Shown here: in pieces, positions 37,992-64,000 of the stretch
Layout: each line of letters begins with the position of its first letter
Numbering within the stretch: position 1 is the stretch's first letter
Source: Bugula neritina
Taxonomy: Eukaryota > Animalia > Bryozoa
Reading direction: 5' to 3'
Length of the DNA: 64,000 bases
Assembly: GCA_964035545.1 (NCBI GenBank)
Contig: OZ037769.1
Location: forward strand, 16,584,633-16,648,632
Translations under genes and position numbers: made by a program
Notes under the pieces: generated by a model
Told to the model about the DNA's origin: nothing
Seen by the model: only the letters and a program-made list of their open reading frames with translations
The model's database searches: none

Positions 37992-40900
37992 CTATGTTGA
38001 CTTATTTCCTGTGTTGACGTACACTTTTTCAGTGTTTTGAGAGCGTGTTGTGCGAGGAGAGGGTTTGGGAGTGCCATCCACCACTGTGGGTGCCGTGGCA
38101 GAGGGGAGTGGCGTTATGTAATAGTCATCACGCTCCAAGTTATCCGCGTATTCTTCCAACGCCAGGTAGTCATCTGGGATGTCTTTTGTAGTTAAACGTG
38201 TGTATGAGTAACCAGCATCATTGTCTGAGCCAGCACTGGGAGTTGTCGTACCATTCAGTAGTTGACCAACAAACTCGGAAATCTCAGAGAAAGCAGGTCT
38301 ATCTTCAGGATCTGTTTCCCAACATCGGCACATCATTTCATATCTAGGGTAGATGATGTCATTTGATTGTACTCAGAGGCAACAGGAAATGGCTAGTCGT
38401 ATATTGAGTCAGTCCCTCACTGAGTCATAGTCACTCACTGAGTCATAGTCACTCACTGAGTCATAGTCACTATGTTACAGTCAATCACTTAATAACAGTC
38501 ATTTACTAAAACACAGTCATTTACTAAGGCACAGTCAAATACTAGGTAACAATAAAAATAAGAACGCATTTCAAGTATTAGCATGAATAAATACATGCAA
38601 CTAATCTCTGTAAGCTTACATGATTGGAGGACAGATTTCAGGCTTGTCCAATCGTTTACCAGTGGAGACATATTCTTTAATATAGTAGTTGTTTACTCCT
38701 GGGTATGGTGAGCTACCACGGGTGAGTAACTCCCACATAGTTACTCCGAAAGACCACTAAATAGGAAAACATAGATAAAAACGTTCATAAACCAATGAGT
38801 GCAAACTGGTTAGAATAGCAATAGTTTGTGCCAACGTCAAAACTTAACTAACTTTTTACACTGCTATAAAAATGCCTATAGACCAAAGGGAAATTAAACC
38901 CGTACCACGTCAGACTTTGATGTGTATTTCCCTTCTTTCAGTGACTCCACTGCCATCCATTTCATTGGCAGAGGTTTGTTCATGTCTCCCATTCTGTAGT
39001 AATCTTGTGAGTAGACATCACGGGACATACCAAAGTCTGCTATCTTCACAAAGTAAGATCCGTCAACCCTATACAACCAACCAACAAAGACTAAACATTG
39101 ATATATAAAATAGGCGTTTGAAATAGAGTAAAATTTCAGTTAACTTAGTTAGATTTTAGAACATGTTTTTGTGATTTAATTACGTTTAAGTAAAAGAAAA
39201 ACAATTGAACTCATACAAAAACTGGTTAGAAAGAAAAGAGTAACTTTTTCAGTTAGACAGATCAGCATTGTTTTAATCAAGAAGAGATGGTGGAAAGATC
39301 CATTGAAAAGAAAGATTAGTTTGTATAAATAGACGGGTAGCTAATCGCTCAAGTGTAAAGGAACTGATGGTCCAAAGTAGTTAATATCAAAACCCAATCA
39401 TAACAAATCATTTAATAAGAAAAGTAGTGAATAAGAAGAGCAGGGGAAGAAACTCACATGCAGTTTCTGGCTGCCAAATCTCGATGAACAAATCTCTCCT
39501 TAGCTAAATAAGCCATTCCATTAGCTACCTGATAAGCAAAGTGGAGCAAATCAGCCAAGACTATTTCCTAAAATGAAATAATTCATGCATACAATAATAT
39601 ATACAATAAACTAAATTGTTATTAGCCTATATTCAACATATCATAGTAAAATAACTTCAAACTTTGTATATGTAATCTATATGATGTGTTGTAAGACTAT
39701 TGGCTATTGCAGCTTCAAACAAAAATAGTGCTAACTTAGAGTTTGGGGGTGGCATATAAAATGTTGAACAGTCCTTCGTTTATAGTAGACACACTACTAC
39801 CAGATATTATCAAAATATTTTCTGGTATCTACCAGCTCTTTGGCATCATCTGACAACTAACTATTTACTCACTTGGAAAATAATTAAACAAAATCAAATG
39901 CATGGTGTTGCCAATAGTTCCTATTTATGGATATATCCATGTTCATAAAACAGTTTTCTACGAAATAGTTCTGCTTTGTGTATCAGTAAATTCAGTATTC
40001 AGGCTGAGAAAGTTAAGTAAATCTACAGATTTTTATAGCTATTGGGATACTAGACATCAAATGACCTTCACAAAGGTCAGAACACGGTTTCCTTACCAAA
40101 TCATCTTTTTTCACAAAAGAGCAAAGGTCACCGTTCTCCATATAAGGAAGGACAACCAAAGGTCGTTCACCTGGCTCGTACACTACACCGACCAATGAAA
40201 GGACATTCTCGTGTTTAAAGTCAATCATCAACACGCCTTCCGCAAGAAAATTTTCCAAATCTTCAAACGACATTTCCTTATCCTCTGGTGAACAGAAGCA
40301 GATTATATAAGAGACATGCACCCTTCACTAACATTCACTATATCTGGGCTTAGATTGTTACAGTAGAGTCTATGAATACAGAATTATGCAGTATAGTTTA
40401 CAAAATGTAATATTGAAACTTATATCAACTAATTATTTACTATTATTATAACTGGAGAATAATATTCATTATACTATCGCAAAGTTCACTAAAAACTATA
40501 ATAGTTAATGATACAACAATTTCGATAATTTATAGTTTGTATTACTCAATACTTAAATACTAACCTTTAATACTTTTAACAGCTACAGTTCTCAAATTTC
40601 CAGCTGGTGTAGTTAATTGACTTTTATAGACAAGTCCAAAATGACCTTTCCCTAGCTGATTTCCTATACGCAGCCTTGAAGATGGTATTTTACAGCGATT
40701 TACTTTGGCTTGAATCTCAGCGTCAAGTTCTCGGTTGTTGAAGAGAGGAACAAGAGTCTCCATTTCCTTTGAACTGTCTGGAAAAATCAAAACAACCCAT
40801 CCATTGGTCAATTAAAGCAAATTTTCTGTTTAATACAGTTTAATTAACATTTATTTAGTTAGTAATTTACCAATTTACTCTGTAAAGATTACTCTTCAAT

Positions 40901-43900
40901 ACTGTGAGCTACACTTCCACACGGAAGTCCTCTACTCACCTTGCTTAACGTATCTAGCATGGCCTCCGCTGTTTTCAGCGTCAACTTCTAAGGTTTTCCC
41001 CAACCTCTCTTTTAGGTAGAACTTCTTAATCAGACAGTAGATTAGTACTGCTATGAGAGCCACACCCACTAGGACCATCAGCACAATCATTGAGATCCTA
41101 AAGGCAGGGTTAGTCTGCCAGATGTTAGTCTTATAGAAGACATACCCAACATTGACTCTCTTGTTACCAACCTTCACCTAGTAAATATACGAAACTCTGC
41201 ATTTCGATCCACCCAAATAGTTGCATGAAATAGGTTTTCAAACCCACTGGAAGAAAATAAAGATAAAAAGCTACATTATCGGCTAACAGAGACTAAATAC
41301 CCTTAATGGACAAACTTTGTATATTTAGTGAAGTTCAATATACGTGTGTTTTTACTATTTTAGTTATTAGGTTAAGAGTCAGTGTAACTTGGATCCCATT
41401 TGATTATAACTATTATTAGGTTAAAAAAGCTGGTGTAAGCTAAACTTCAAAATAAAAAGAGTAAAGCAAAGTTAAAATATGATTAAGTTTCAACAGCAGA
41501 TTGAGTTTCTAGAAATTAGTCTTGAGTGAATATGATTGGCTACTAACCTCAATATGGGGGATATCACGGTTCTTGTAAGTTACAGAGTTGTTAGGGTCAT
41601 GATCAGGGCTGGTGCTGGGAGGCTTACAACTCAGACGGTTTAGCAGCAAACTAGTGACTTCACACACTCCATCTACTCCTATGATGACGATGTAGTCTGA
41701 CAAAGTAGTAGCGTAGTCTAATTTATCCCCATCTATATGTATTAAATCACCAGCATCATATTCCTACAAATTTACAGACATTTTTTATAGCAGTAAAACA
41801 AAATTGAAGTTGAATCATATCACTTTAGCTATAACTTCAGAAGCATCAAATAATTACAGACAACCTTTCTTAAACACCACCCTTAAAGTTACAAACAAAA
41901 GGCTAGAAATGACTCATCTCACAATTTTACTGACTTTAGGCTCATATAATGTTTCTTAATGTACAATAACAGAAAACGTTCAATGTTCTAAACTCGTTGA
42001 TTATCTTTATGAATTTATTTGGATTAGACTTTAATATTTTAAATGAACATAACTTTTTCTGTCATATAATTATCATTTAGAACAAAATGTGCTTTCAAAG
42101 TCTTTTTCTTATACAGCTCCTAACTCTATTTTCATAATAGCACTTTGTAAAGTTACTGCGCTACCTTATAGATTTTCTAGATGAGTATAAAGCTTTTATC
42201 CAAGTGATCGAGATAGAAACTTGGAGCAAATGATTTAATCAACAATACAGAGTTAGTACAGGAGTTCTCCCCTCTCAGCTATAAACTTACCAAAACCTCA
42301 TTCCCGATACTCTCTTTGAAATCTTCTATTACAGGATCTTGGTAGACGTAGAGAGTAGCCAAGTCTCTGAGATCACTGTCTGTACTCTGTCTCAAGTCTT
42401 TGTACAATATGTGACCATCGAATACGAAACCCAAAGAAAACTGCACATTCGACTGTCCATTGAGAGCATTGGTTGTGTCTATTTCTACAAAACATATTTA
42501 TATTAGAAACAGTGTCTCTGTTTCTTGAAAATTATAGAAATATTGTATAGGCTGCTTAGTTCTATAGAAAATATAGCTGTAGTACAAAAATTGCATATCT
42601 CTAAAAAGTATATGTGATAGTAGAAAGTGTCAATTCTACAAAAAAATACACGTTACATAACTTTGATACAAATTAACTGAAAAACTTTGTAGATGATCTT
42701 CAGGGTAATGCGAGATTTTAAAAATGACAATTGGAAAGCACCTATTTGGAAAATGGACAATTAGAAAATGGACAATTGGAAAATAGACATTTGGAAAATG
42801 ACATCATGGAAAATGAAAAATCTTCAGCATGATCTAGTCCTGAGGGGTTGTTCAGTATCTGGTCAATTCCAAAATAGCTTTTAAAAATAAATATAATTGT
42901 CGAATCAGTTAGGCCATCATGGAAGTAGAATTAGTTACCAAGTAGTTCCAATTTAAAATTGTTCACATTTACAAAAAGCTTTTTGAACACGACTAGATAC
43001 TAAGCGCCCCTCTGGACTAGGCCATCTTAAATATTCTTCATTTTCCAAACGTTTATTATTCGATCTATAGTCAGTTGTTTATCACAGTGAGTGTGATTGT
43101 ACTTGACTCACTAGAGTATTAGTCCAAATCCTAAAAAAGCCTTTGTTATAAAACTGGGAATCAAATTAATTGTGTTACCCGTGCCTTTAAAATTTTAAAA
43201 AGAAATTATTCCTTGTGACTTTTTGTGATAGTTTTTGGATTTGTCATTCTTTAGCAGTTTTCTAGGGTATTTATATTTCATGTTATTGTTATTTCTTTTT
43301 CATTGTGTATACCGGTCTTCGACCGAAATCAGCATGTCAAAATGTCGGGCCTCCAGTTAGTCCGAATGTGTCCAAGATCGGTCATATTCGGACTTTTGCT
43401 GGCTCTGAAATTCCGAAAATGTCTGATCTTTGGCCGAAAATTGGTCGAAGTTTCTGGACGGAATGTTTTCGTAACTACATAAAGAGTTGAGCTTACAGTT
43501 TAGATTCAGTCTACAGCTGGAGCTCGCCGGACAAGGACTTTACTATTACTACAATAAAGCTATTTCTCGTGCACCTCATACACCTGTTTAGGTGTTCTAA
43601 ACCCATAGATCTACTACATTATATATTACTATTATAATCATATTTGGTAAATATATAATAATTATTATAGTCAAAATTGAACAAAGTAAAACGGATCCAT
43701 TAGCCGTACCAACATCATCCGAGTCAGCAGATGTAGTCACCTGTCTCTTTCTCCTAGCAACTCCCCCTACATATAAGATTATAAGTTAGTAACAGATAAT
43801 TTACACATTTTATATTCATGAATAAGTATACCAAATTGGAAAACTGTTTAATATCATTTCACTTCGCATGAAATATTATATTCCAATTGGCCGTTCTAAC

Positions 43901-46900
43901 CAGATACAGTGTTTACTGTGAGGCTATCAACTATTATATAATGTATAGTAGTGAGTTGATTATGGAAACACATTGATTACGTCCCTTACTAGAGTTAGGA
44001 TATGTAGACTAAATTAGCAAGACATCTAACCAATACTAACTCAGGGTATCAACTCACCTGTTGTAGAGGAAGTAGTGGATGACGAGCTGACAGGAAGTGA
44101 CACGTTCCCAGGAAGTGCTAAAAGAAAGTATATTCTAAGTTATGAACTTAAACATCACTAACTCAGCTTATATTCAAAGTGATAATGATATTCACCATGT
44201 TTGTCTAGTCTCCCACAATGATATCTCTAGTGTATAGAATAGCAAGTAGAGTGTATATTTATATTGATGCATATAGTATAAGAATGTAGGTGTTACCTTG
44301 TTTCACACCATTCAGATAAGGTATTGATATAGACAGATCTACTACTCTACACACCATCTCATCACTTTCTATGACATCACAGCGCTAAAAGTCAATCATG
44401 TACTAGATGAGAAAGTTGAAAGAAAAAAGTAACATGCTTGTCTTAAAACTTATAAAGCTCGTAGCCAATCAAATAAGAGATTTGACAACACCCTGTTTTC
44501 ATTGGGTGATATCTTCAGTTATATCAAGAAGATAAATATATTCCATTAGTATTTAGTATTATATAACCTTCTATTATTTATATGGACAGAACAAGGTATA
44601 GCTTTACACTTACCGTGAACAACTGGTCAATAGAAACAGCTCTTTGAGTCAAATAAACAATCATCTCAGGGTAGGCAATAGAATCTAAATGTTCTCCAAC
44701 TACCGTAAGATTTGTACCTCCACTGTCAAGAGAACAGCAAAATACAAGTACAAACGTTTATCATTTTTAACGCTAAAACTGCATAAATATGTGCATTTGA
44801 GAATAATTACAGCAAAAAAAAAGGTAATGATTATTGGATGATATATACTATAATCATCCCTCTTTGTTTGCAATAGAACTGATCACCCATAAAGTAGCAT
44901 ATGAATGTTTAGCAATATAATACAATTGCTATATTTAACTAATATCCTATATGATAATATATAGTTAATATATTCTCTGATAACATAAACTCCTACTAAA
45001 ATATCACACGTATATGCATAGTATAATGACTTAGATATAACAAGTTGTTGATATTTCGCACTGAAATACTTTTTTAAATTACTTAAAGATTTTTACTAGA
45101 GAAATGTATCAACAACTGGGCAAATTTCAAAATCTTGTGAAGTACCAGTAGTATTATATTAGGTTTACTATGAAATGTATGACCAGCTATGCTTGTAATA
45201 ATAGTAACAGTATATATAATACTCTGTATATATTGTGGGTATATGTGGTAGAAACTGGATTCTACCTGAGGATGGTGGTACGAGGGTAGATGTCCTCTAT
45301 GATAGGATTAGGTCTGTACTCAAAAGAATAGTACAAAGTTTCTGGACCAAGATCTGCAGTAGAGTTTACAAGTCTGCCGGTGAATCCAACAGCTGCAGTC
45401 TCATTTGGTAAGGCAACTCCAAGGTATGGCGTAGAGTTCAAAGTTCGTTCACTACCTCTATAAAAGATAATAAGTAGATTCAATATCTTGTGATATTATC
45501 TAGAGTGGGTAGTAGTGCAATGTTTTATAAGTCATGGGAATCTACGAAATAAGAGTAAGATATATTCTTAACGCACTTGAGACTCAATCTTTGTGTCACT
45601 CCGTTGATCTCAACCTCAAGATTCCCTTTGCCAAAGTATCCACCACTGAATGTGATTGCGGTGCCTCCAGCTTTCGGCCCATACTGTGGGTCAATGTCGT
45701 CAATGTACCAATGCTAAATAAAACATAATTATTCTGGAATAAAGAATCTAGAATAAACGTTTAAGCTTTTTTTCTGTTTTCTTTTCGAACTTTTTCGCCA
45801 AACAAACTTTAATTAATCAAAATTATGGTGATATTGGCATTCTATTATTATTTGATAATTTCATATAGGATACAAAATGGCTGCATTTAAACTAACAAAC
45901 ATGATGATGATTTATGGTAAATGCTAAATTAGTTCATTTTGTTACCAAACTGTCTACACACTACATGATAGTCAGTACAGGAAATGCTAAATTGTTACTA
46001 ATATCTCACACATTGGCGGCCAGCGAGTTCAACATCTACAGATCCTTCACAAGGACATTGACCAGTGAATGTATCACACTGTTTACTCATGGAGAGGTCA
46101 CTGCAGGCGCAGTCTGCACAGACGCCGAGTCTCTTGGTGTACCGGAAGACCCCCGCGGAGTTGGTGCACTGCTCACATTGATCTCCTGTGATACCCGGGG
46201 GACAAGTACACTCGTAGAACTTGTATCCTGGCTTCGTGAACTGGTAGTAGTTGGACATGTTAACAGCTGGCCCGGGAAGTAGCTGGTACGGATTCCCTCC
46301 GCAATGAGGTCTAGGAATACATTATCATTTATAGATTATGTTTTGTAATAGTAGTATTAATGTGAATATCATAACTCTTAGAATATAAAGAATATTTCAA
46401 GTTCTATAAAGGAACATGAATTTATACATATTCAGGATAAAAACAATCTAAACACTTTCAAACTTTTTATCAGCAAAAGACCAATATCATTAATTCCAGA
46501 AATTACAATTTACACAAAAATATTTTTTTTATGCAAATAGGATAAAACTGAGGGGAAAATAATAGATTAAGAGAACTTAATTGTCTTGTATTACTAAAGT
46601 AATATTTCAAAAATATAATATTTTTATAAAACATGTAGAGAACTCTTTAGAGATGAAGATAAAAATGGTATGAGAATGACGAACTGCTAAATGTGTATAT
46701 TGTGTATTCATTGTGAGTCATGAGTCATGTAGGTCTAGCAGATTGTAATCCCTGGAAGCTAGTCATGGAAGCGCCTTTGTTAATAAAAACTACTTTAATT
46801 TATAAAAAAAATATCTATGACGTTTATTTTTTTTGAACTATTAAGCAATTTTCATGATTTAGTAACACAATTTATACACTAAACTAAAATAACTTCAAAT

Positions 46901-49900
46901 AAACTTCAAAACAGCAAAATAATATGTATAAACTACTCAAAAACATTGGAAAGTTATTTTAACTATAACTGTGTCAACATGTACTTTCAAGAAGAGCTTT
47001 AAATCTTGCACAAAAATTATTTTGTTTATTTATAAAAGAAGAATTTTTCATTTATAAAACAAGACTGTTGGAAATATTAATGAAAGAATGCCCTCTGGTG
47101 AGTAGACAACTCCTGAATCCAACTCGGCAAACTTTCACCTCGTTTGAAGTTTCACATGCAAATGAGAGGGTTGTGCTGGTGAAGCACAAAAACTTGTTTT
47201 TATTTAGGAACTATCTTTTGGTAATTCTGTAAAGGTACTACGAATATGTATTTCAACAGCCAACAGAAATAAGTTTTTATATTTAAACAGTCCATAAAAC
47301 TAAATGTTCAATTTCAACAGCCAATAAAAACAAAGAGTAATAATTCAACATATATTTTTTAATTTAAGCATGCATGCATTTAAACTATATAAAATATCTG
47401 CTCCTACAGTTACAGTATCGCGTAGTTTTAGTGATCATTTACACAAGTAATGACTTTACGAGACGTGGTTATATAGATATAAAAAGGCAGGGCTTCTCAC
47501 CTTCCGTAGATTCCAAGGTTATTAATCGAGTACCAGTTTTCCTGTCTGGCAGCGTCCACAGCAGACGTGTGTCCAATAAGACGGATGTACAACTGTGTGC
47601 TGCTGTACGCATCATTTAGGTACTCTCCCTCTTCGGTGGGTGTCAGAATTGGAATGTAAAATCGACTAAAACATACCTCGAAGTGTACAATAATATTTAC
47701 ACACAACATAGTCCAAGGTTTAAACTCTAAGTTGACGCCAGATATAATTAGTCTCTAGACTATCTTGAGTTTACTTCACAGTTTAATCAAAATAGTTGGA
47801 GCTTCAGATTACAGCAAACTTATTCTCGTGTTTTAAACAATAGAAAACTGATTTCACTAAAAATGCCCATCGTACATTTAGGAGTTATCTCCCTTATTAT
47901 GAATCACCTCCATAATATAAATATATGGAAATTGCATCTAATACTTAATACTTTTTTAATAATTATTCATTCTGTTTTCACTTTTGTTCATAACTTTTTA
48001 GCAAAAGTCAAAAATCCTTTAGTTAACGCTGCAAAAAGCAAAAACTGAGTTAATGAAAAAAAATTATGATGTGACATGCAAATGGTGACATTGTTCAAAT
48101 ACCTGGTAAAGAGTTGAAAGACATCTTTCCAGTTGAAACATTTCGGTGTGATGTTTGTCTGTACCACAGCTCGTTTCTTTCTTTTCTGAGGAACTATTCT
48201 ATTCTTTTCTCCAAACACAGCGTTATAGTTGTATGGATCTATACCATAGTCTTCTAAACAGTCATCGCTCACATAAGATACAGCACCCTCTATAGCCGGG
48301 TTAGTACTGATTAGTTCAATCTCCATTCTAGCAGGGTGAAAAGGAGTTATCTCGTCATCTTCATCGAAAAAACCACCCAACAGAGTGGGGAAATAGCCCG
48401 TCAAAGCATACATCTGCGAGAAGACAATAGAAATACATTCATAGAAGGAAAGCTGGTGGTTCTTCAGTTATATGTGGTAAATCTGTAAAATGCTGCCATT
48501 TGTTGATCTTCGCTTGTTATGGTTACAAAAAGCATTGCAAAAATTACGGTATTCGGGGCTGAGTTATTTGCATACCCAAGTGATTACTGGGTAGCAGAGT
48601 TTTAGTAACTATCAACTATCAACAGATTTCATGTATCTTAAAGCCAACATGCAAACTAATTTAATTATATTTTTTGGAAAACAATTCCAGTCTAATATTG
48701 TGGTAAATTTTGGGCTATTTATATTGCTAATAGCTGGTAGATAAAGGCTATGTAATTAACTCCCTGGGCTTAGTAGCCTGACAATTATATGCTTTAATAA
48801 CGCTATCATTTGTAACTCTCTGGTAATCATGTAAATGGTTTCCTTAAATGGGGGGTAGAACACTGACTAACACTAATAGCTGCCTGGGCAAGTCTGGGAA
48901 ATTTCCATCTTCTAAGTAACAGTAATGCGTCGACTTGCCCAGAGAATTCTAGAACATTCGGAACTTCCGTTTGGATGAATACGTGGATGGACAATGATTG
49001 GCTGGCTGGTCCACAGTGTTATTTATAAGCTGAGGCTTATTGGCCAGCCTGAAAATGGGCATATCTCAGTATATAAGGAGGTGATCAAGCCAACCTAGAG
49101 AGTTGGAGAGCATTTAGCTACTGTTTCATTCTTAGATTGTGTACTGTTATTTTGCTACTTGTAATTATATTTTTGCTTGGTTAATAACAAAGGATGTATG
49201 TTTGACCTCTACAATAGGCCAACCTACAACACATGTCTACTCACAGAATACTCTCGTACCTTTCTCTTGAATAATAACAGTAAATTAGGTAATAGCATTG
49301 GTTCTTCTCAATAACCCAAAAAGTAGAATTTATATGCTCTGAAATTCCACAACAATACATCCCAAATACTCAAATCTTTAAACTTGAAGACACCAGAAAA
49401 ATTAAGGCACTATTGTTTCATGAAAAATGACATTTAGCTACAATTTTCGAAACAAAATTTAAACAGTTTATTCTATCCCTTGTTTACTATTCAGTTTGTA
49501 TCGAGACGTACCAGCATTGGTCTATTGAAAGTAATAGTTATCTCTGCCTCGTCAGTATAGTCAGACACCCAGCCATTGCCGTTGAAGATGGAAAGTTTCT
49601 CGTTGCTAATAAGGCCAGAAGATGTGTCAGTCCCGAACCTGCTAGTTGAATTCTGGTACGGATCAACACAGTCAAACTGGTTTTCATCTCCACCAATAAA
49701 GTTTAACGTGTCTGAATAATGACGAGGACATTCACACTCGGGTTGAATTCGGTAGAGAGCTAGTGGAGATCCAGAGTACATGGAGTAGATCTCACTGGAA
49801 GGAGAACAGAAATGGTGCTCAACAAAGAAGAACGTGACTCAACTAATCAGAGATCCACCAGAAATTAGTGATTCAGTACTAGCGTAAGAGAGAGCCAATT

Positions 49901-52223
49901 GCTCTAAACATTTGAACTGGTAATTTTACTAAAAAGAACACAAATACTGAACAGCAAATTCAAATACTCAAATAACTACTTTTAAAAATTCTGAAAGCTT
50001 AAAGTTATGCAAAAAACAAATGCATTCTATTTAATTATGTTAGTATTTAAAATCCAAAGACTAATAATTCTTATTGTTTATATTTTTGGTCTCGAGTTGA
50101 CAGCCTTCCAAGTGATCATTATTGAGCGAATTAGAATACAAGTGTAGTTAAGCTGTTAGTTGAGAAGTAAGATAAATCTCTTTAAATTAAACATGCCTAT
50201 ATATATTTTACAGGTTAAACAATTAACTCCTCTTGCTGTTTTGAGAAGTAAAATTGTACAAAATTTACTTTGTACTTAAGAAGTCAAGTAACAAAACAGT
50301 TACGTATTTAAACACTAAATAAGTGACTTACTTTGTGGAGGCCTGATTATTGTATAACTTGATGTTGGTAAACTCTCCTGTAATGTCAGACCCTCCAAAC
50401 CCAACAACGTACTCGGAAATAGTCTGGAATCTGCTTGAAAGTGGTAAATACCTGTGAGATACTTCTCCATCAACAAATACCAAGATTATGTCTTCAATAA
50501 ACTGCAAATTGTAAACAAATAAGATAAAAGATAACATACAGTGAATATGAAATAATTATCATCACTGAGCACTGGAATAATTGCAGTTCAGCTACCTGCA
50601 AAGTTATGTGTCGAGTTTGACTCGGCGTTGGATTTTGGTCAAAGACTGTCAAGTTGTGATCTGGTGAGTTACTAGCTTCCAGGTATCCACTTTCATTAAA
50701 CCAGAAACTAAGAGTCCAGAATATTCCAGATGAAGGGCTGTCAATAATGGGTCCATACCCAGAAATGTTGAGAAATGGAGCTCTAAAAGTTTCAGAAGGA
50801 AATTTGAATGGTAATTTGATTCATAAAACATTAGTCAAAATTACATGCTAGTATAGACCTACTCAGTCTATGTTAGTAGTTCACTCAGTCTATGTTAGTC
50901 TATGTTATTCAGTCTATGCTACTCGGTCAATGTTAGAGAACTTACGGTGCAGACGTATTCAGTGCTGTAAGCTGCTCAACTGTGAACATCAAAGTCCAGT
51001 TTTGTGAAGGAGTCTGTAAACTGGTATATATCTGTTGAGGAGGCGAGACAGTGTTACACTCTCCTGTAGCCTCAGTAATGATGATATTACTTCCTGTCAT
51101 AGTGATACCGCATTCTGGAAGAGAGGTGTTGAAGGGTAAGTATCCCCCATCTAGAGAGCCAACTTGATATTGGATCTCAGACACCAGATAGGTACTGAGA
51201 GAGTTGGATTTTGAGTGAGCACATGTTGGGTACAAACAACGTTGAGGAAAACAGTCTACTATTACAGAAGTTGAGGCATTAGTAGGAAAAGTGGAAGTGG
51301 TGATTCCTGCTGACTGAGATGGCAAACAGTACGACTGTAGAGGGTCACAGTTTTCACGATTTGAGTTCTCCAGTTCAATTTCAACCTCTACTGGAATATT
51401 AGGGAGAGAGTTAATAACGGTTGGATATGAATTCACATCTGGAATCCCGCTTAACTCCACCAGCCAAATAAAATAGTCATCTGCACCAGACTGGGCATCT
51501 GTCACATACAACAAGCATGGCAGCCATAGAAAAGCTCTTATAGCTCCTGGAAGTAACCTGTAACAAAATGATGAGCCGTTAGCATTCACCCCTTAAGGTC
51601 TTTAACATCTGGTTTGAAGTTAGAGTTGAAAAGTTTGCAAGAACATGCTCTCATACATACACTAAAATCACCAGTTGCATTACAAACAGCACCACAGACA
51701 GCTCTATAAGTCACAAATGTATCTGTTACAGAAGGAAACACTGCGAAACATTATCTTTCTTCAACTGAAGCAGTATTAACTCTTTCATCATGCCGTGACT
51801 CCCAAACAAACTTTATTACTCTCAATCATCACACTTCACACAACTGTTCTACCAGATTCTCCAAATCCAGCTCACACATTGCCTATCGAATTCAACTCGT
51901 GTTGCAGAGGGAGAGACTGGGTCTACACGTGGACTACGGAACCACTTGATGGCAAACTAATGCCTGTACTAGTTTTAACAGTAAATTTATATTTATGGAT
52001 TAATATAAAACCTTTGGACTGATAAAGTTGCTCTTTTTCAGCAAAGGTTACCACCTACTGTCAACTATAATTCATGGGTTGAGCCCCTTGACTTCATAAT
52101 TGAATTTGATTAGAACTTAGTTACTAATAGTAATTTGTCTCAGCAATCGGGAAGGAGGCAGATTGGATAGAAATGGCAGTAGATTAATATGGTGATCACT
52201 GAAGACAGAATTTACCTGACCAT
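37992..52223 (-). CDS. Chimeric receptor tyrosine kinase: signal peptide, Usherin-like LamG-like/LamNT/laminin-EGF head, 3 IPT domains, TM, MET/RON-like kinase; ~1,496 aa
   Basis: Exons (52216-52223 putative), 50946-51557, 50596-50782, 50332-50501, 49512-49794, 48103-48413, 47501-47665, 46010-46310, 45577-45713, 45266-45457, 44614-44722, 44297-44384, 44058-44117, 43710-43766, 42291-42484, 41548-41763, 40940-41177, 40565-40777, 40097-40284, 39458-39567, 38906-39068, 38620-38756, 37992-38343 give one 4491-nt frame. Kinase motifs: [104 protein letters not shown] motif: [20 protein letters not shown]: [21 protein letters not shown]. Confidence 0.88.
42730..43050. repeat. Degenerate fold-back element with ttggaaaatggaca sub-repeats, in an RTK intron
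   Basis: Arm ~42807-42863 is an imperfect reverse complement of ~42991-43048; a 14-bp unit is repeated ~5 times on the left. Confidence 0.55.
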
Positions 52224-62700: not shown

Positions 62701-63361
62701 TTGACAAGGCTTTATGTGGAAGTATAGCACTGCAGCTATTCAAGGCTCACAAGCCATGGTATAATAATGACAGTAAATAGGTAGCAACCTTTGTGGAAAA
62801 GCCGTAACTTTAGCAGTCCAAATATACTGTATGTTTTATGTAACTCATCAATGCAAATTTGCTATTAAGTAGCAGTTGAATTCGGCACTGGAAATCAACT
62901 CTTCAATGGCAGTTGTTGATAAATGAAGAAATGTGCAGTGAGCTGGATTTGGAAAATCTGGTGAAATAGTTGTGTGTGTGGTGTGATGATAGTAGTAAAG
63001 TTTGTTTGGGAGTCATGGCTGTTTATTTCTAATTCTAGAACACAGGCTTTTCTCTATTTCTCCTTCAATTCACCTACCTCCAGCAATTTGGATTTCCGAA
63101 TAGGCATGATGGAAGAGTTAATACTGGTTCAGTTGAAGAGAGATAATGTTTTGCAGTGTTTTCTTCTGTAACAGATACATTTGTGACTGATAGAGCTGTC
63201 TGTGGTGCTGTTTGTAATGCAACTGGTGATTGTAGTGTATGTATGAGAGCATGTTCTTGCAAACTTTTCAACTCTCACTTTAACCAGATGTTAAAGACCT
63301 CAGACCTTAGGGGGTGAATATCAACAACTCAGTATTTTGTTGCAGGTTACTTACTGGAGCT

Positions 63362-63960
63362 ATGAGAGCTTTTCTATGGTTGCCATGTTTGTTGTATGTG
63401 ACGGATGCCCAGTCTATTGCAGAAGACTATATTTTTTGGCTGAGGAGGCTTAGTGGAATTCCAGATGTGAATACATATCCAACCGTTATTAACTCTCTTC
63501 TTGTTAATATTCCAGTAGAGGTTGAAATAGAACTGGAGAACTCAGATCGTGAGCACTGTGACCCTCTACAGTCGTACTGTGTTCCATCTCAGTCAGCAGG
63601 AATCACCACTTCCACTAGTTCTACTAATATCTCAACTCCTGTAATAGTAGACTGTTTGCCTCAACGTTGTTTTTACCCAACATGTGGTCACTCGAAACCC
63701 AACTCTCTCAGTACCTTTCTGGTGTCTGAGATCCAATATCAAGTTGGCTCTCTAGACGAGGGATACTTACCCTTCAACACCTCTCTTCCAGAGTGCGGTA
63801 TCACTATGACAGGAAGTGATATCATCATCACCGAAGCTACAGGAGAGTGTAACACTGTTTTGTCACCTCAACAGATATATACCAGTTTACAGACTCCTTC
63901 ACAAAACTGGACTTTGATGTTCACAGTTGAGCAGCTTACATCACTGAATACGTCTGCACC
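63362..63960 (+). CDS. First coding exon of a second, inverted copy of the Usherin-head receptor (gene continues beyond the window)
   Basis: Acceptor at 63344-63345, ATG at 63362, signal peptide [16 protein letters not shown], ~87% aa identity to exon 50946-51557 (hand count), all cysteines kept, same phase-2 donor at 63961. Confidence 0.85.
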
Positions 63961-64000
63961 GTGAGTCCTCTAACATAGACTGAGTCACATAGACTAACAT

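What the first reader, a model, noticed from the sequence alone, without database searches (positions are those of the whole stretch)
37992..51557. Usherin-headed MET/RON-type receptor tyrosine kinase: an apparently undescribed chimeric RTK
Seen: 22 phase-consistent exons form one frame running signal peptide, ~650-aa head, three IPT domains, TM, and an intact kinase. Established: MET/RON ectodomains are Sema-PSI-IPTx4. Here there is no Sema or PSI domain. The head instead follows the Usherin (USH2A) N-terminus block by block (human sequence from memory): YPTVINS..NC...SYC..DC...C..C ~ FPRLEN..VC...TFC..FC...C..C; NWTLMFTV ~ SFTLAVWL; RHITLQ|[12 protein letters not shown] ~ IHLSVQ|VHQTKISFFING; [26 protein letters not shown]...IQPECECP ~ FVGRMQDFRLYQVALTNREILEVFSG...AQSHCRCP; GWVS ~ SWVS; HPARMEI..SYVSDDC ~ QPTEIRI..QYFARNC; IPILTP...[12 protein letters not shown]...[12 protein letters not shown] ~ FSILTP...KATQIRFHFHGQ...YYAVDEITISGR; then laminin-EGF modules. 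Inference: the matrix/adhesion head of a sensory-cilium link protein has been grafted onto a MET signalling stalk, so the receptor cannot bind HGF through Sema and may respond to matrix, adhesion or mechanical ligands.
Basis: partly seen in the sequence, partly recalled or inferred. Interest (0 to 1): 0.96.

Follow-up and report, generated by a model that had tools for sequence, protein, structure and literature searches.

The report
Usherin-like head on MET-type kinase receptor
A bryozoan (Bugula) gene family encodes cell-surface tyrosine-kinase receptors that keep the stalk and kinase of the MET growth-factor receptor but carry, in place of MET's ligand-binding head, a very diverged copy of the front end of usherin; no description of this domain combination was found.

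Summary
On the minus strand, 51557-37992, 22 exons all have AG/GT borders, agree in phase and carry no stop (about 1,473 codons). Spliced RNA contigs from a sibling Bugula show seven junctions, including the head-to-stalk junction 46010|45713, though that one rests on a single thin contig.

The stalk and kinase are MET-like: a laminin-EGF exon, a TIG/IPT exon, a transmembrane segment, an intact Tyr kinase closest to MET/RON, twin activation-loop tyrosines and a C-terminal YVN site. There is no Sema or PSI domain.

Pfam does not recognise the head, but three lines tie it to usherin:
- A natural B. neritina fragment of it looks LamG-like by features and predicted fold.
- Exon profiles match, in order, the exons of this genome's own usherin gene and the laminin-N core (hhalign P 7e-5 to 0.014; combined about 3e-8).
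- The intron phases are the same series, with three or four introns at the same place.

The first 200 residues show no significant usherin match, and no start codon was found.

The family has four tandem copies, one 30-65% diverged copy with the same layout, and one fragment. dN/dS is 0.2-0.46. Nothing similar was found outside Bugula or in the papers searched. First readers of this scan flagged the same architecture on paralogous copies. Verdict: a real new variant of a MET-family receptor, with ligand unknown.

The parts
50946..51557 (-). Exon E2 (first exon found). It encodes a hydrophobic signal-like segment, a Cys-rich ~150 aa stretch and the first LamG-like strand. It has no ATG and enters in phase 2 from an unseen 5' exon.
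   Evidence: Only Bugula fragments match it among 1.84e9 proteins. No significant match to usherin U1 or to LN N-terminal segments.
50596..50782 (-). Exon E3, LamG-like domain, phase 2 to 0.
   Evidence: The splice to E2 and E4 is confirmed by the natural protein P0004. P0004 is Laminin_G_3-like by features and fold.
50332..50501 (-). Exon E4, LamG-like domain (last strands), phase 0 to 2.
   Evidence: Against usherin exon U4: shuffle p 0.002, hhalign P 0.0088. Both flanking introns sit at the same place and phase as in usherin.
49512..49794 (-). Exon E5: end of the LamG-like domain, a CxCP linker, and the first LN-like strands (GWxS, EITIT).
   Evidence: RNA joint 49512|48413. hhalign against usherin U5 P 0.014 and U6 P 0.0084.
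48103..48413 (-). Exon E6: LN-like core. It includes a KRKKR furin-type motif at 48171-48185.
   Evidence: RNA joints on both sides. hhalign against an LN-core profile: P 7e-5, probability 63%. Shuffle p 0.001-0.03 against several LN genes. No Pfam hit.
47501..47665 (-). Exon E7: LN-like C-terminal strands, ending in Gly-Arg with a phase-2 intron inside the Arg codon, as in usherin.
   Evidence: P 0.0088.
46010..46310 (-). Exon E8: about one and a half laminin-EGF modules. Its last codon (Cys) abuts the IPT exon.
   Evidence: Pfam EGF_laminin 2e-7. Its profile hits the usherin LE exons. Junction 46010|45713 seen in an X2 contig.
45577..45713 (-). Exon E9: start of IPT/TIG repeat 1.
   Evidence: Pfam TIG 8e-5. 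TIG hit at the same place in the whole-genome scan, also in paralogs B, C and E.
44297..45457 (-). Exons E10 (45457-45266), E11 (44722-44614) and E12 (44384-44297): rest of IPT1 and an IPT2-like repeat.
   Evidence: RNA joints 45577|45457, 45266|44722 and 44614|44384. Phases. The IPT2 assignment is by eye only.
44058..44117 (-). Exon E13: a 20-codon Ser/Thr-rich linker.
   Evidence: A loose end of an X2 contig at 44297 matches this exon. Paralog E has a 643-aa Thr/Pro/Ser exon at this place.
43741..43766 (-). Exon E14: a 26-nt micro-exon encoding an RRKR furin-type motif.
   Evidence: needed for phase closure. There is no RNA evidence for it.
41548..42452 (-). Exons E15 (42452-42291) and E16 (41763-41548): an IPT3-like repeat and the membrane-proximal stalk.
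   Evidence: Conserved in paralogs including E. No Pfam hit on their own.
40940..41177 (-). Exon E17: transmembrane helix and start of the juxtamembrane region.
   Evidence: A hydrophobic stretch of about 25 residues followed by basic residues.
37992..40777 (-). Exons E18-E23 (40777-40565, 40284-40097, 39567-39458, 39068-38906, 38756-38620, 38343-37992). They encode a Tyr kinase with GxGx[17 protein letters not shown], twin Tyr in the activation loop and SDVWSFG, plus a C-terminal tail with YVN before the stop codon.
   Evidence: Pfam PK_Tyr_Ser-Thr in every exon tested. Nearest solved kinases are MET/RON. Motifs read from the translations.

Best explanation
What it is: one member of a Bugula-restricted, tandemly expanded family of single-pass receptor tyrosine kinases. 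The family was built by exon shuffling.

The two halves:
- Membrane-proximal half: IPT repeats, a transmembrane helix, and a catalytically intact kinase with twin activation-loop tyrosines and a C-terminal YxN docking site. This half is MET-type.
- Distal half: MET's Sema-PSI module is replaced by the 5' module of an usherin-like gene, that is a LamG-like jelly roll, a laminin-N-like beta sandwich and about 1.5 laminin-EGF modules. This module has since diverged almost beyond sequence recognition.

Shown here: the exon structure, splicing across the fusion point, the domain content of the stalk and kinase, the LamG-like fold of part of the head, weak but collinear profile similarity and shared intron phases and sites with the same genome's usherin gene, purifying selection on all parts, and the multi-copy family.

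Inferred, not shown: the receptor is activated like other RTKs. A ligand bound by the LamG/LN/LE head would bring two receptors together, the kinases would trans-phosphorylate the YY loop, and the YVN tail would recruit Grb2-type adaptors. By analogy with LN and LE domains the ligand might be an extracellular-matrix or cell-surface partner, or a homophilic LN-LN contact. Furin-type sites (KRKKR in the LN-like loop, RRKR in the stalk) suggest proteolytic maturation.
For: Gene model:
- 22 AG/GT exons are phase-closed without stops.
- Spliced RNA contigs show seven junctions, including 46010|45713.
- The natural protein P0004 confirms the E2-E3-E4-E5 splices.
- The B. neritina annotation has a 1040-aa TIG+kinase model starting inside E6.

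Family:
- Paralogs B, C and D lie in tandem, and paralog E (30-65% identical) has the same collinear layout and the same LE|IPT junction.
- dN/dS is 0.37-0.46 for the head and 0.20-0.22 for TM plus kinase.

Stalk and kinase:
- Pfam finds EGF_laminin, TIG and PK_Tyr.
- Nearest solved kinases: exon K2 gives MET 1e-12, then RON 4e-10, then AXL. K5 gives MET on top. K3 gives RON, TrkC and MET close together.

Head:
- P0004 resembles Laminin_G_3 clusters, with feature score 0.96 and TM 0.57-0.67.
- hhalign results: E6 against the LN core P 7e-5; E7 against the LN C-terminus 0.0088; E4 against U4 0.0088; E5 against U6 0.0084 and against U5 0.014. Fisher combined: 3e-8.
- In the shuffle test, the best usherin exon in each of rows E4-E7 is the collinear one. 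E4 against the LN segments serves as a clean negative control.
- Intron phases are 2,0,2,0,2,2 in the receptor against 2,0,2,(2),0,2,2 in usherin. The sites are identical at E3|E4, E4|E5 and E7|E8, and within 0-3 residues at E5|E6.
- The comparator gene has the usherin architecture: LN 2-50, Laminin_G_3, LN 93-233, then LE repeats.
Against: - Pfam Laminin_N, Laminin_G_3 and every other family fail on the head exons.
- Sequence searches of the PDB find nothing.
- Genome-wide searches with the E5 and E7 exon profiles reach only paralogs, not usherin.
- A plain HMM ranking of usherin-locus ORFs is not significant.
- E2 (200 aa) has no significant usherin or LN match.
- E6 scores better against another LN gene (C8:8.955 Mb) than against usherin, so the LN part alone does not single out usherin.
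- Each individual P value except one is only around 0.01.
- The fusion junction rests on a single low-depth contig with 26 letters on its shorter side.
- The RNA comes from a 90-99% similar sibling or paralog, not demonstrably from this copy.
- No start codon has been found for this copy.
Confidence: 0.7

Rival explanations
1. The head is a generic LamG-like domain plus a lineage-specific beta-rich region and EGF modules. It was recruited from some other secreted protein (a laminin, netrin or pentraxin-type gene), and the usherin resemblance is chance or convergence. The receptor is still a chimeric MET-type RTK.
For: - No curated profile recognises the head.
- E2 is unmatched.
- E6 scores higher against a non-usherin LN gene.
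- The profile searches of the whole genome do not reach usherin.
Against: - The order LamG-like, CxCP linker, LN-like, LE is that of usherin only.
- E4 and the first half of E5 match the usherin exons specifically. The usherin-only pairs combine to P 1.6e-4.
- The intron phase series is the same, and three to four intron sites are shared with usherin.
Confidence: 0.2
2. These are two neighbouring genes, a secreted usherin-like protein and an N-terminally truncated MET-like kinase, wrongly joined by the model.
For: - The joining RNA evidence is one thin contig.
- The public B. neritina annotation splits the locus into three models.
Against: - The junction is phase 0 with good GT..AG sites 297 nt apart, and it is seen spliced.
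- There is no stop, start or signal peptide at the border.
- The same adjacency and junction residues are kept in five paralogs, including the 30-65% diverged copy.
- The B. neritina 1040-aa model itself starts inside head exon E6 and runs through to the kinase.
- Exon depths of head and stalk are alike in both RNA runs.
Confidence: 0.05
3. This particular copy (gene A) is a non-functional or decaying duplicate. The functional members are the paralogs.
For: - No in-frame ATG lies in or near the first exon, and the candidate 5' exon homologous to the B. neritina one gives no ATG in frame.
- Paralog D has a broken E5, and fragment F exists, so the family does shed copies.
Against: - All 22 exons are open with intact splice sites and kinase motifs.
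- dN/dS is well below 1 against B and C.
- All paralogs share the same acceptor with a conserved branch point, so an unseen 5' exon is the simpler reading.
Confidence: 0.1

Closest known systems
MET / RON receptor tyrosine kinases (Sema-PSI-IPTx4-TM-kinase)
   Same: IPT/TIG stalk, single transmembrane helix, kinase closest to MET/RON among solved structures, twin tyrosines in the activation loop, C-terminal YxN docking motif, and a basic furin-type site in the ectodomain.
   Different: No Sema and no PSI domain. The head is LamG-like plus LN-like plus laminin-EGF. There are fewer recognisable IPT repeats, a Ser/Thr-rich linker and a micro-exon inside the stalk. HGF/MSP-type binding through Sema is therefore not possible.
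Met-LP receptors of Lophotrochozoa and Echinodermata (full plexin ectodomain plus Tyr kinase; Junqueira Alves et al. 2019, PMC6374515)
   Same: They are another case of a MET-like kinase carrying a non-canonical ectodomain in lophotrochozoans, and they show that ectodomain swapping occurs in this family.
   Different: Met-LP keeps Sema and the PSI-IPT ring of plexins. This family has neither. That survey was seeded with Sema-domain proteins, so it could not have found this family.
Usherin (USH2A): LGL, LN, 10 LE, 2 LG, 32 FN3, TM, PDZ-binding tail (PMC7317166)
   Same: The order LamG-like, linker, LN-like, LE; collinear weak profile similarity; the same intron phase series and three to four shared intron sites with the Bugula usherin gene on C3.
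   Different: Only about 1.5 LE modules. No FN3 or LG domains and no PDZ-binding tail. The head is far too diverged for Pfam. The true usherin orthologue is a separate gene at C3:5.94-5.963 Mb.
Laminin and netrin LN-LE modules
   Same: The LN-like core of exon E6 aligns to the conserved LN core of several laminin- or netrin-type genes of this genome (P 7e-5).
   Different: Laminins and netrins have no LamG-like domain ahead of or within the LN domain, and they are secreted, not kinase-linked.

Membership tests
MET/RON receptor tyrosine kinase family | N-terminal Sema domain (seven-blade propeller) | tested here: not met
   PF01403 against the whole genome gives no hit in the window. There is no Sema hit in any exon translation.
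MET/RON receptor tyrosine kinase family | PSI domain after Sema | tested here: not met
   No PF01437 hit in any exon. As a positive control, PSI is found in another IPT-kinase gene at C4:9.49 Mb.
MET/RON receptor tyrosine kinase family | IPT/TIG repeats between the head and the membrane | tested here: met
   TIG at 45713-45577, E 8e-5, and in the genome scan at the same place in paralogs B, C and E. Further repeats are seen by eye only.
MET/RON receptor tyrosine kinase family | Kinase domain groups with MET/RON | tested here: inconclusive
   Nearest solved sequences, exon by exon: K2 gives MET 1.4e-12, RON 4e-10, AXL 1e-9. K5 has MET on top, just ahead of AXL/MER. K3 gives RON, TrkC and MET within a factor of 3. 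K4 has Trk and InsR on top. No tree was made, because exons were not joined.
MET/RON receptor tyrosine kinase family | Twin tyrosines in the activation loop and C-terminal multi-substrate docking tyrosines | tested here: met
   DFG followed by ..DYY.. in exon 39068-38906, and YVN four residues from the end of exon 38343-37992 (translations). The function of these motifs was not tested.
Usherin (USH2A) orthologue | LGL plus LN recognised by curated profiles, then 10 LE, FN3 and LG arrays, and a PDZ-binding tail | tested here: not met
   There are no Laminin_N or Laminin_G_3 hits in the head exons. Only one LE exon is present, followed by IPT and kinase. The real usherin gene is at C3.
Usherin-type N-terminal module (homology of the head, not orthology) | LamG-like domain followed by a CxCP linker, LN and LE, collinear with usherin and sharing its introns | tested here: met
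   LamG-like by features and fold. Collinear hhalign P values of 0.0088, 0.014, 0.0084, 7e-5 and 0.0088. Shuffle test. Intron phases and sites. The first 200 residues are not matched.
Laminin N-terminal (LN) domain, PF00055 | Score above Pfam's gathering threshold, or an LN fold | tested here: inconclusive
   Pfam: no hit. Profile-profile against the LN core of eight genes of this genome: probability 63%, P 7e-5. The fold was not testable, because a joined sequence may not be folded.
Met-LP (plexin-ectodomain MET-like RTK) | Complete plexin ectodomain (Sema, three PSI-IPT units, three IPT) | tested here: not met
   No Sema or PSI. Definition taken from PMC6374515.

The most novel reading that the evidence does not exclude
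The family is a new class of matrix- or contact-sensing receptor tyrosine kinase. Its LN/LE head would bind basement-membrane or cuticle components, or LN heads on neighbouring cells. Its rapid tandem diversification in a colonial, surface-settling animal would serve settlement-cue sensing or colony self/non-self recognition.
Probability: 0.12. Interest if true: 0.8.

Novelty: new variant of a known kind. Interest (0 to 1): 0.55.

Why it matters
It is a clean, datable example of how receptor tyrosine kinases gain new inputs. The ligand-binding module of a MET-type receptor was exchanged for the front of a matrix-link protein by exon shuffling at a phase-0 intron. The donor gene, a PSI-IPT-kinase gene of the usual MET type and the chimera are all still present in one genome.

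It widens the known repertoire of MET-family ectodomains beyond Met and Met-LP. Surveys seeded with Sema domains cannot see such receptors.

It also corrects the public B. neritina annotation, where the gene is split into three 'hypothetical proteins'.

Its reach is limited. So far it is seen only in Bugula, and the ligand, expression site and biological role are unknown.

Tried and rejected
- Pfam on every exon of the head gave nothing.
- Whole-genome scans with Laminin_N, Laminin_G_3 and Sema gave no hit in the window.
- phmmer with exon E2 against 1.84e9 proteins returned only Bugula fragments. Four further hits were repetitive, mostly bacterial-type surface proteins, rejected as spurious.
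- The search for homologous proteins with P0004 and with the E5 profile returned only Bugula-derived sequences. The search is length-limited, so the blank says little.
- PDB sequence searches with the E5 and E7 profiles and with P0004 found nothing.
- ESM Atlas on exon E6 alone gave no usable hit.
- tblastn and a plain HMM ranking of the head exons against the usherin locus were not significant.
- Genome-wide profile searches with E5 and E7 found paralogs only.
- The search for the 5' exon failed. The segment homologous to the B. neritina first exon gives no in-frame ATG in this copy, and a 32-nt mini-intron reading fails on phase.
- An alignment of P0004 with paralog exon fragments, meant for structure prediction, came out misaligned, so no AlphaFold job was sent.
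- The family profiles against the heads of two other IPT-kinase genes (C2:14.58 Mb, C4:9.49 Mb) showed no similarity.

All searches used single exons by reference, or natural database proteins. As a result there is no whole-protein domain scan, no kinase tree and no fold of the LN-like region.

Full report
Organism and locus. The window is G000:C5:16584633-16648632 of a 216-Mb animal genome. Protein fragments 84-100% identical to the head exons are named 'hypothetical protein EB796_001271 [Bugula neritina]' and come from assembly GCA_010799875.2. The genome is therefore B. neritina or a sibling species of that complex.

Gene model. Stop-to-stop frames on the minus strand, the sequence itself and a GT/AG phase search give 22 exons from 51557 to the stop at 37994-37992. 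A carry-over check, exon by exon, shows the following:
- every exon has an AG before it and a GT after it;
- the phases chain;
- no codon is a stop;
- the total is about 1,473 codons.

Two small exons are easy to miss. One is a 60-nt Ser/Thr-rich exon (44117-44058). The other is a 26-nt micro-exon (43766-43741) encoding an RRKR motif.

The first exon has no ATG. In all paralogs it is preceded by the same CTAAC branch point, pyrimidine tract and AG, so a 5' exon must supply the start. I could not find that exon.

Transcription and splicing. Two 'symbiont metagenome' RNA-Seq runs (X1, X2; contigs only, 90-99% identical to the window) hold the exons at depths of thousands and the introns at tens to hundreds. 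They show joints whose skipped parts begin CT and end AC on the plus strand, which is GT..AG for this gene. After refinement against the sequence these joints are:
- 49512|48413
- 48103|47665
- 47501|46310
- 46010|45713
- 45577|45457
- 45266|44722
- 44614|44384

A loose end at 44297 matches exon 44117-44058.

It rests on one X2 contig at depth 18 with 26 letters on the shorter side. The single 'extra' letter there is a synonymous TGT>TGC change of the last Cys codon. This is direct but thin evidence.

Independent support for one gene:
- The natural B. neritina protein P0004 reads straight through the E2|E3|E4|E5 junctions.
- The same public annotation has a 1040-aa model with TIG and kinase hits. 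It starts inside head exon E6 and spans E7 and E8.

Family. Exon E2 and E6 searches of the genome, and tblastn of all exons on fetched loci, show these members:
- Gene A, the one studied here.
- Gene B, head-to-head with A and starting at window 63347.
- Genes C and D, further along in tandem. D has a broken E5.
- Gene E, 0.8 Mb away. It is only 30-36% identical in the head and 50-65% in the kinase, yet has the same exon order and the same ...GRQC|HWYI... fusion junction. It also has a 643-aa Thr/Pro/Ser exon where A has its 20-codon linker.
- Fragment F on C4.

Nei-Gojobori estimates, summed over exons:

| Region | dN/dS, A vs B | dN/dS, A vs C |
|---|---|---|
| Head | 0.46 | 0.37 |
| IPT | 0.32 | 0.37 |
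| TM + kinase | 0.20 | 0.22 |

Both halves are under purifying selection, and the head evolves faster.

Stalk and kinase. Exon-wise Pfam gives EGF_laminin (two stretches) in E8, TIG in E9 and PK_Tyr_Ser-Thr in all kinase exons tested. The translations show GxGx[17 protein letters not shown], a DYY activation loop, SDVWSFG and a YVN motif near the C-terminus.

Nearest solved kinases by exon:

| Exon | Nearest solved kinases |
|---|---|
| K2 | MET 1.4e-12, RON 4e-10, AXL 1e-9 |
| K5 | MET on top |
| K3 | RON, TrkC and MET close together |
| K4 | Trk, InsR and IGF1R marginally ahead of MET |

Together with the IPT stalk this makes the body MET-type. No tree was made.

Sema and PSI are absent. A PSI-IPT-kinase gene exists elsewhere in the genome at C4:9.48-9.49 Mb, so the chimera is an addition, not a replacement.

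The head: negative results. No head exon hits any Pfam family. The other searches also came back blank:
- Whole-genome scans with Laminin_N and Laminin_G_3 miss the window.
- E2 finds only Bugula fragments among 1.84 billion proteins.
- PDB sequence searches are blank.
- Profiles of E5 and E7 searched over the genome reach paralogs only.

The head: positive results.

(a) P0004 covers the end of E2 through the start of E5. The ESM Atlas places it among Laminin_G_3 / concanavalin-like clusters by language-model features (0.96, all ten best agreeing) and by its own predicted structure (TM 0.57-0.67).

(b) I located this genome's real usherin gene on C3 (minus strand, about 5.94-5.963 Mb) from adjacent Laminin_G_3 and Laminin_N hits. 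Its exons give Laminin_N 2-50, Laminin_G_3, Laminin_N 93-154 and 159-233, then LE repeats. That is the LGL/LN/LE front of usherin as described in PMC7317166.

(c) Before scoring, each receptor exon was paired with the usherin exon in the same ordinal place.
- With profiles that include the diverged paralog E, and 1000 shuffles of each usherin exon, the collinear pairs score p 0.002 (E4/U4), 0.009 and 0.03 (E5/U6, U5), 0.019 (E6/U7) and 0.027 (E7/U8).
- In rows E4-E7 the best column is the collinear one.
- E2 and E3 are not significant.
- E4 against sixteen LN segments is flat (p 0.14-0.9), a clean control. E6 scores against the LN core of several laminin- or netrin-type genes, p 0.001-0.05.

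(d) hhalign profile-profile comparisons:

| Pair | P value |
|---|---|
| E6 vs an eight-gene LN-core alignment | 7e-5 (probability 63%) |
| E7 vs LN C-terminus | 0.0088 |
| E4 vs U4 | 0.0088 |
| E5 vs U6 | 0.0084 |
| E5 vs U5 | 0.014 |
| E2 vs U1 | 0.21 |
| E2 vs LN N-terminus | 0.16 |

Fisher combination of the six pre-assigned pairs gives 3e-8, and the usherin-only pairs give 1.6e-4.

(e) Introns. The receptor's head introns have phases 2,0,2,0,2,2. Usherin's have 2,0,2,(2),0,2,2, the bracketed one being an extra intron inside the E5 equivalent.

| Receptor intron | Agreement with usherin |
|---|---|
| E3/E4 | Same site: after H-x-x-x-Q, with Asp-Gly eleven residues on |
| E4/E5 | Same site: in the codon just before a conserved Glu |
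| E7/E8 | Same site: in the Arg codon of the final Gly-Arg of LN |
| E5/E6 | Within 0-3 residues, depending on where an indel is placed |
| E2/E3 | Same phase, displaced |
| E6/E7 | Same phase, displaced |

I take (a)-(e) together as good evidence that the head descends from an usherin-type LGL-LN-LE module. It is not evidence that the first 200 residues do, and the LN fold itself remains unverified.

Known or new. The survey of plexins, semaphorins and Met receptors (PMC6374515) describes Met and Met-LP in lophotrochozoans. It was seeded with Sema-domain proteins. Full-text searches for usherin, laminin N-terminal or Bugula together with receptor tyrosine kinase found no paper with this architecture. 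No protein holding an E2-like region together with a kinase exists among the 1.84e9 representatives. Other first readers of this scan flagged the same architecture on paralogs B and another copy, and an 'exon-shuffling footprint'. I tested those points here, against Bugula's own usherin.

Mechanism. Shown: a spliced, selected, catalytically competent single-pass RTK with a LamG-like/LN-like/LE head. Inferred:
- ligand-induced dimerisation, YY-loop trans-phosphorylation and YxN adaptor docking as in MET;
- matrix, cell-surface or homophilic ligands, by analogy with LN and LE domains (usherin LE repeats bind collagen IV and fibronectin in vitro, PMC7317166);
- furin maturation at KRKKR (conserved in A, B and the B. 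neritina copy) and at RRKR.

None of this was tested.

Limits. Everything was done exon by exon by reference, or with natural database proteins. That is why there is no whole-protein domain scan, kinase tree or LN-region model.

Noticed in passing
window 63347-64000 (+), continuing in L008-L010: Paralog B of the receptor lies head-to-head with gene A, about 11.8 kb away. It is 86% identical in exon E2 and about 95% in the kinase exons. Copies C and D follow in tandem (C5:16.67-16.71 Mb).
   Followed up: yes
window 48171-48185 (-) and 43741-43766 (-): There are two furin-type basic motifs in the ectodomain. KRKKR sits in a loop of the LN-like exon and is conserved in paralog B and a B. neritina copy, but absent in paralog E. 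RRKR is encoded by a 26-nt micro-exon in the stalk. MET itself is matured at a similar basic site.
   Followed up: partly
L003 17-1945 (G000:C5:17457016-17458944, +): The diverged paralog E carries a 643-aa open exon of Thr/Pro/Ser repeats (mucin-like) between IPT2 and IPT3. This is exactly where gene A has a 20-codon Ser/Thr linker exon (window 44117-44058).
   Followed up: partly
window 51558-52130 (-): No start codon was found for gene A. Exon E2 begins at a conserved branch point plus acceptor. The segment homologous to the annotated first exon of the B. neritina copy (about 52088-52126) gives no in-frame ATG. Paralog B and the B. neritina copy have an in-frame ATG five codons into E2, where A has ATA.
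   Followed up: partly
G000:C3:5942000-5963000 (-), loci L005-L007: This is the genome's true usherin gene. Its first coding exon matches Laminin_N positions 2-50, and the Laminin_G_3 domain follows before LN positions 93-233. In this gene, therefore, the LamG-like domain lies between two parts of the LN domain.
   Followed up: partly
G000:C4:9481993-9492205 (-), locus L035: This is a PSI-IPT-kinase gene of the usual MET type. Its 394-aa first exon looks Sema-like by eye but gets no Pfam hit.
   Followed up: partly
G000:C2:14577000-14586800 (+), locus L034: This is another gene with a weak laminin-EGF exon directly before a TIG exon and a MET-like kinase (52% identical in exon K2). Its head shows no similarity to the family studied here. 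Further TIG-plus-kinase pairs lie at C2:14.12 Mb and C3:6.25 Mb, the latter 0.3 Mb from usherin.
   Followed up: partly
L012 3813-4096 (G000:C5:16690812-16691095) and G000:C4:12794603-12795871: Decaying family members. Paralog D has a frame break and a TAA in exon E5. A fragment on C4 holds only E5-E7-like pieces close to paralog E, with a stop and no kinase within 20 kb.
   Followed up: partly
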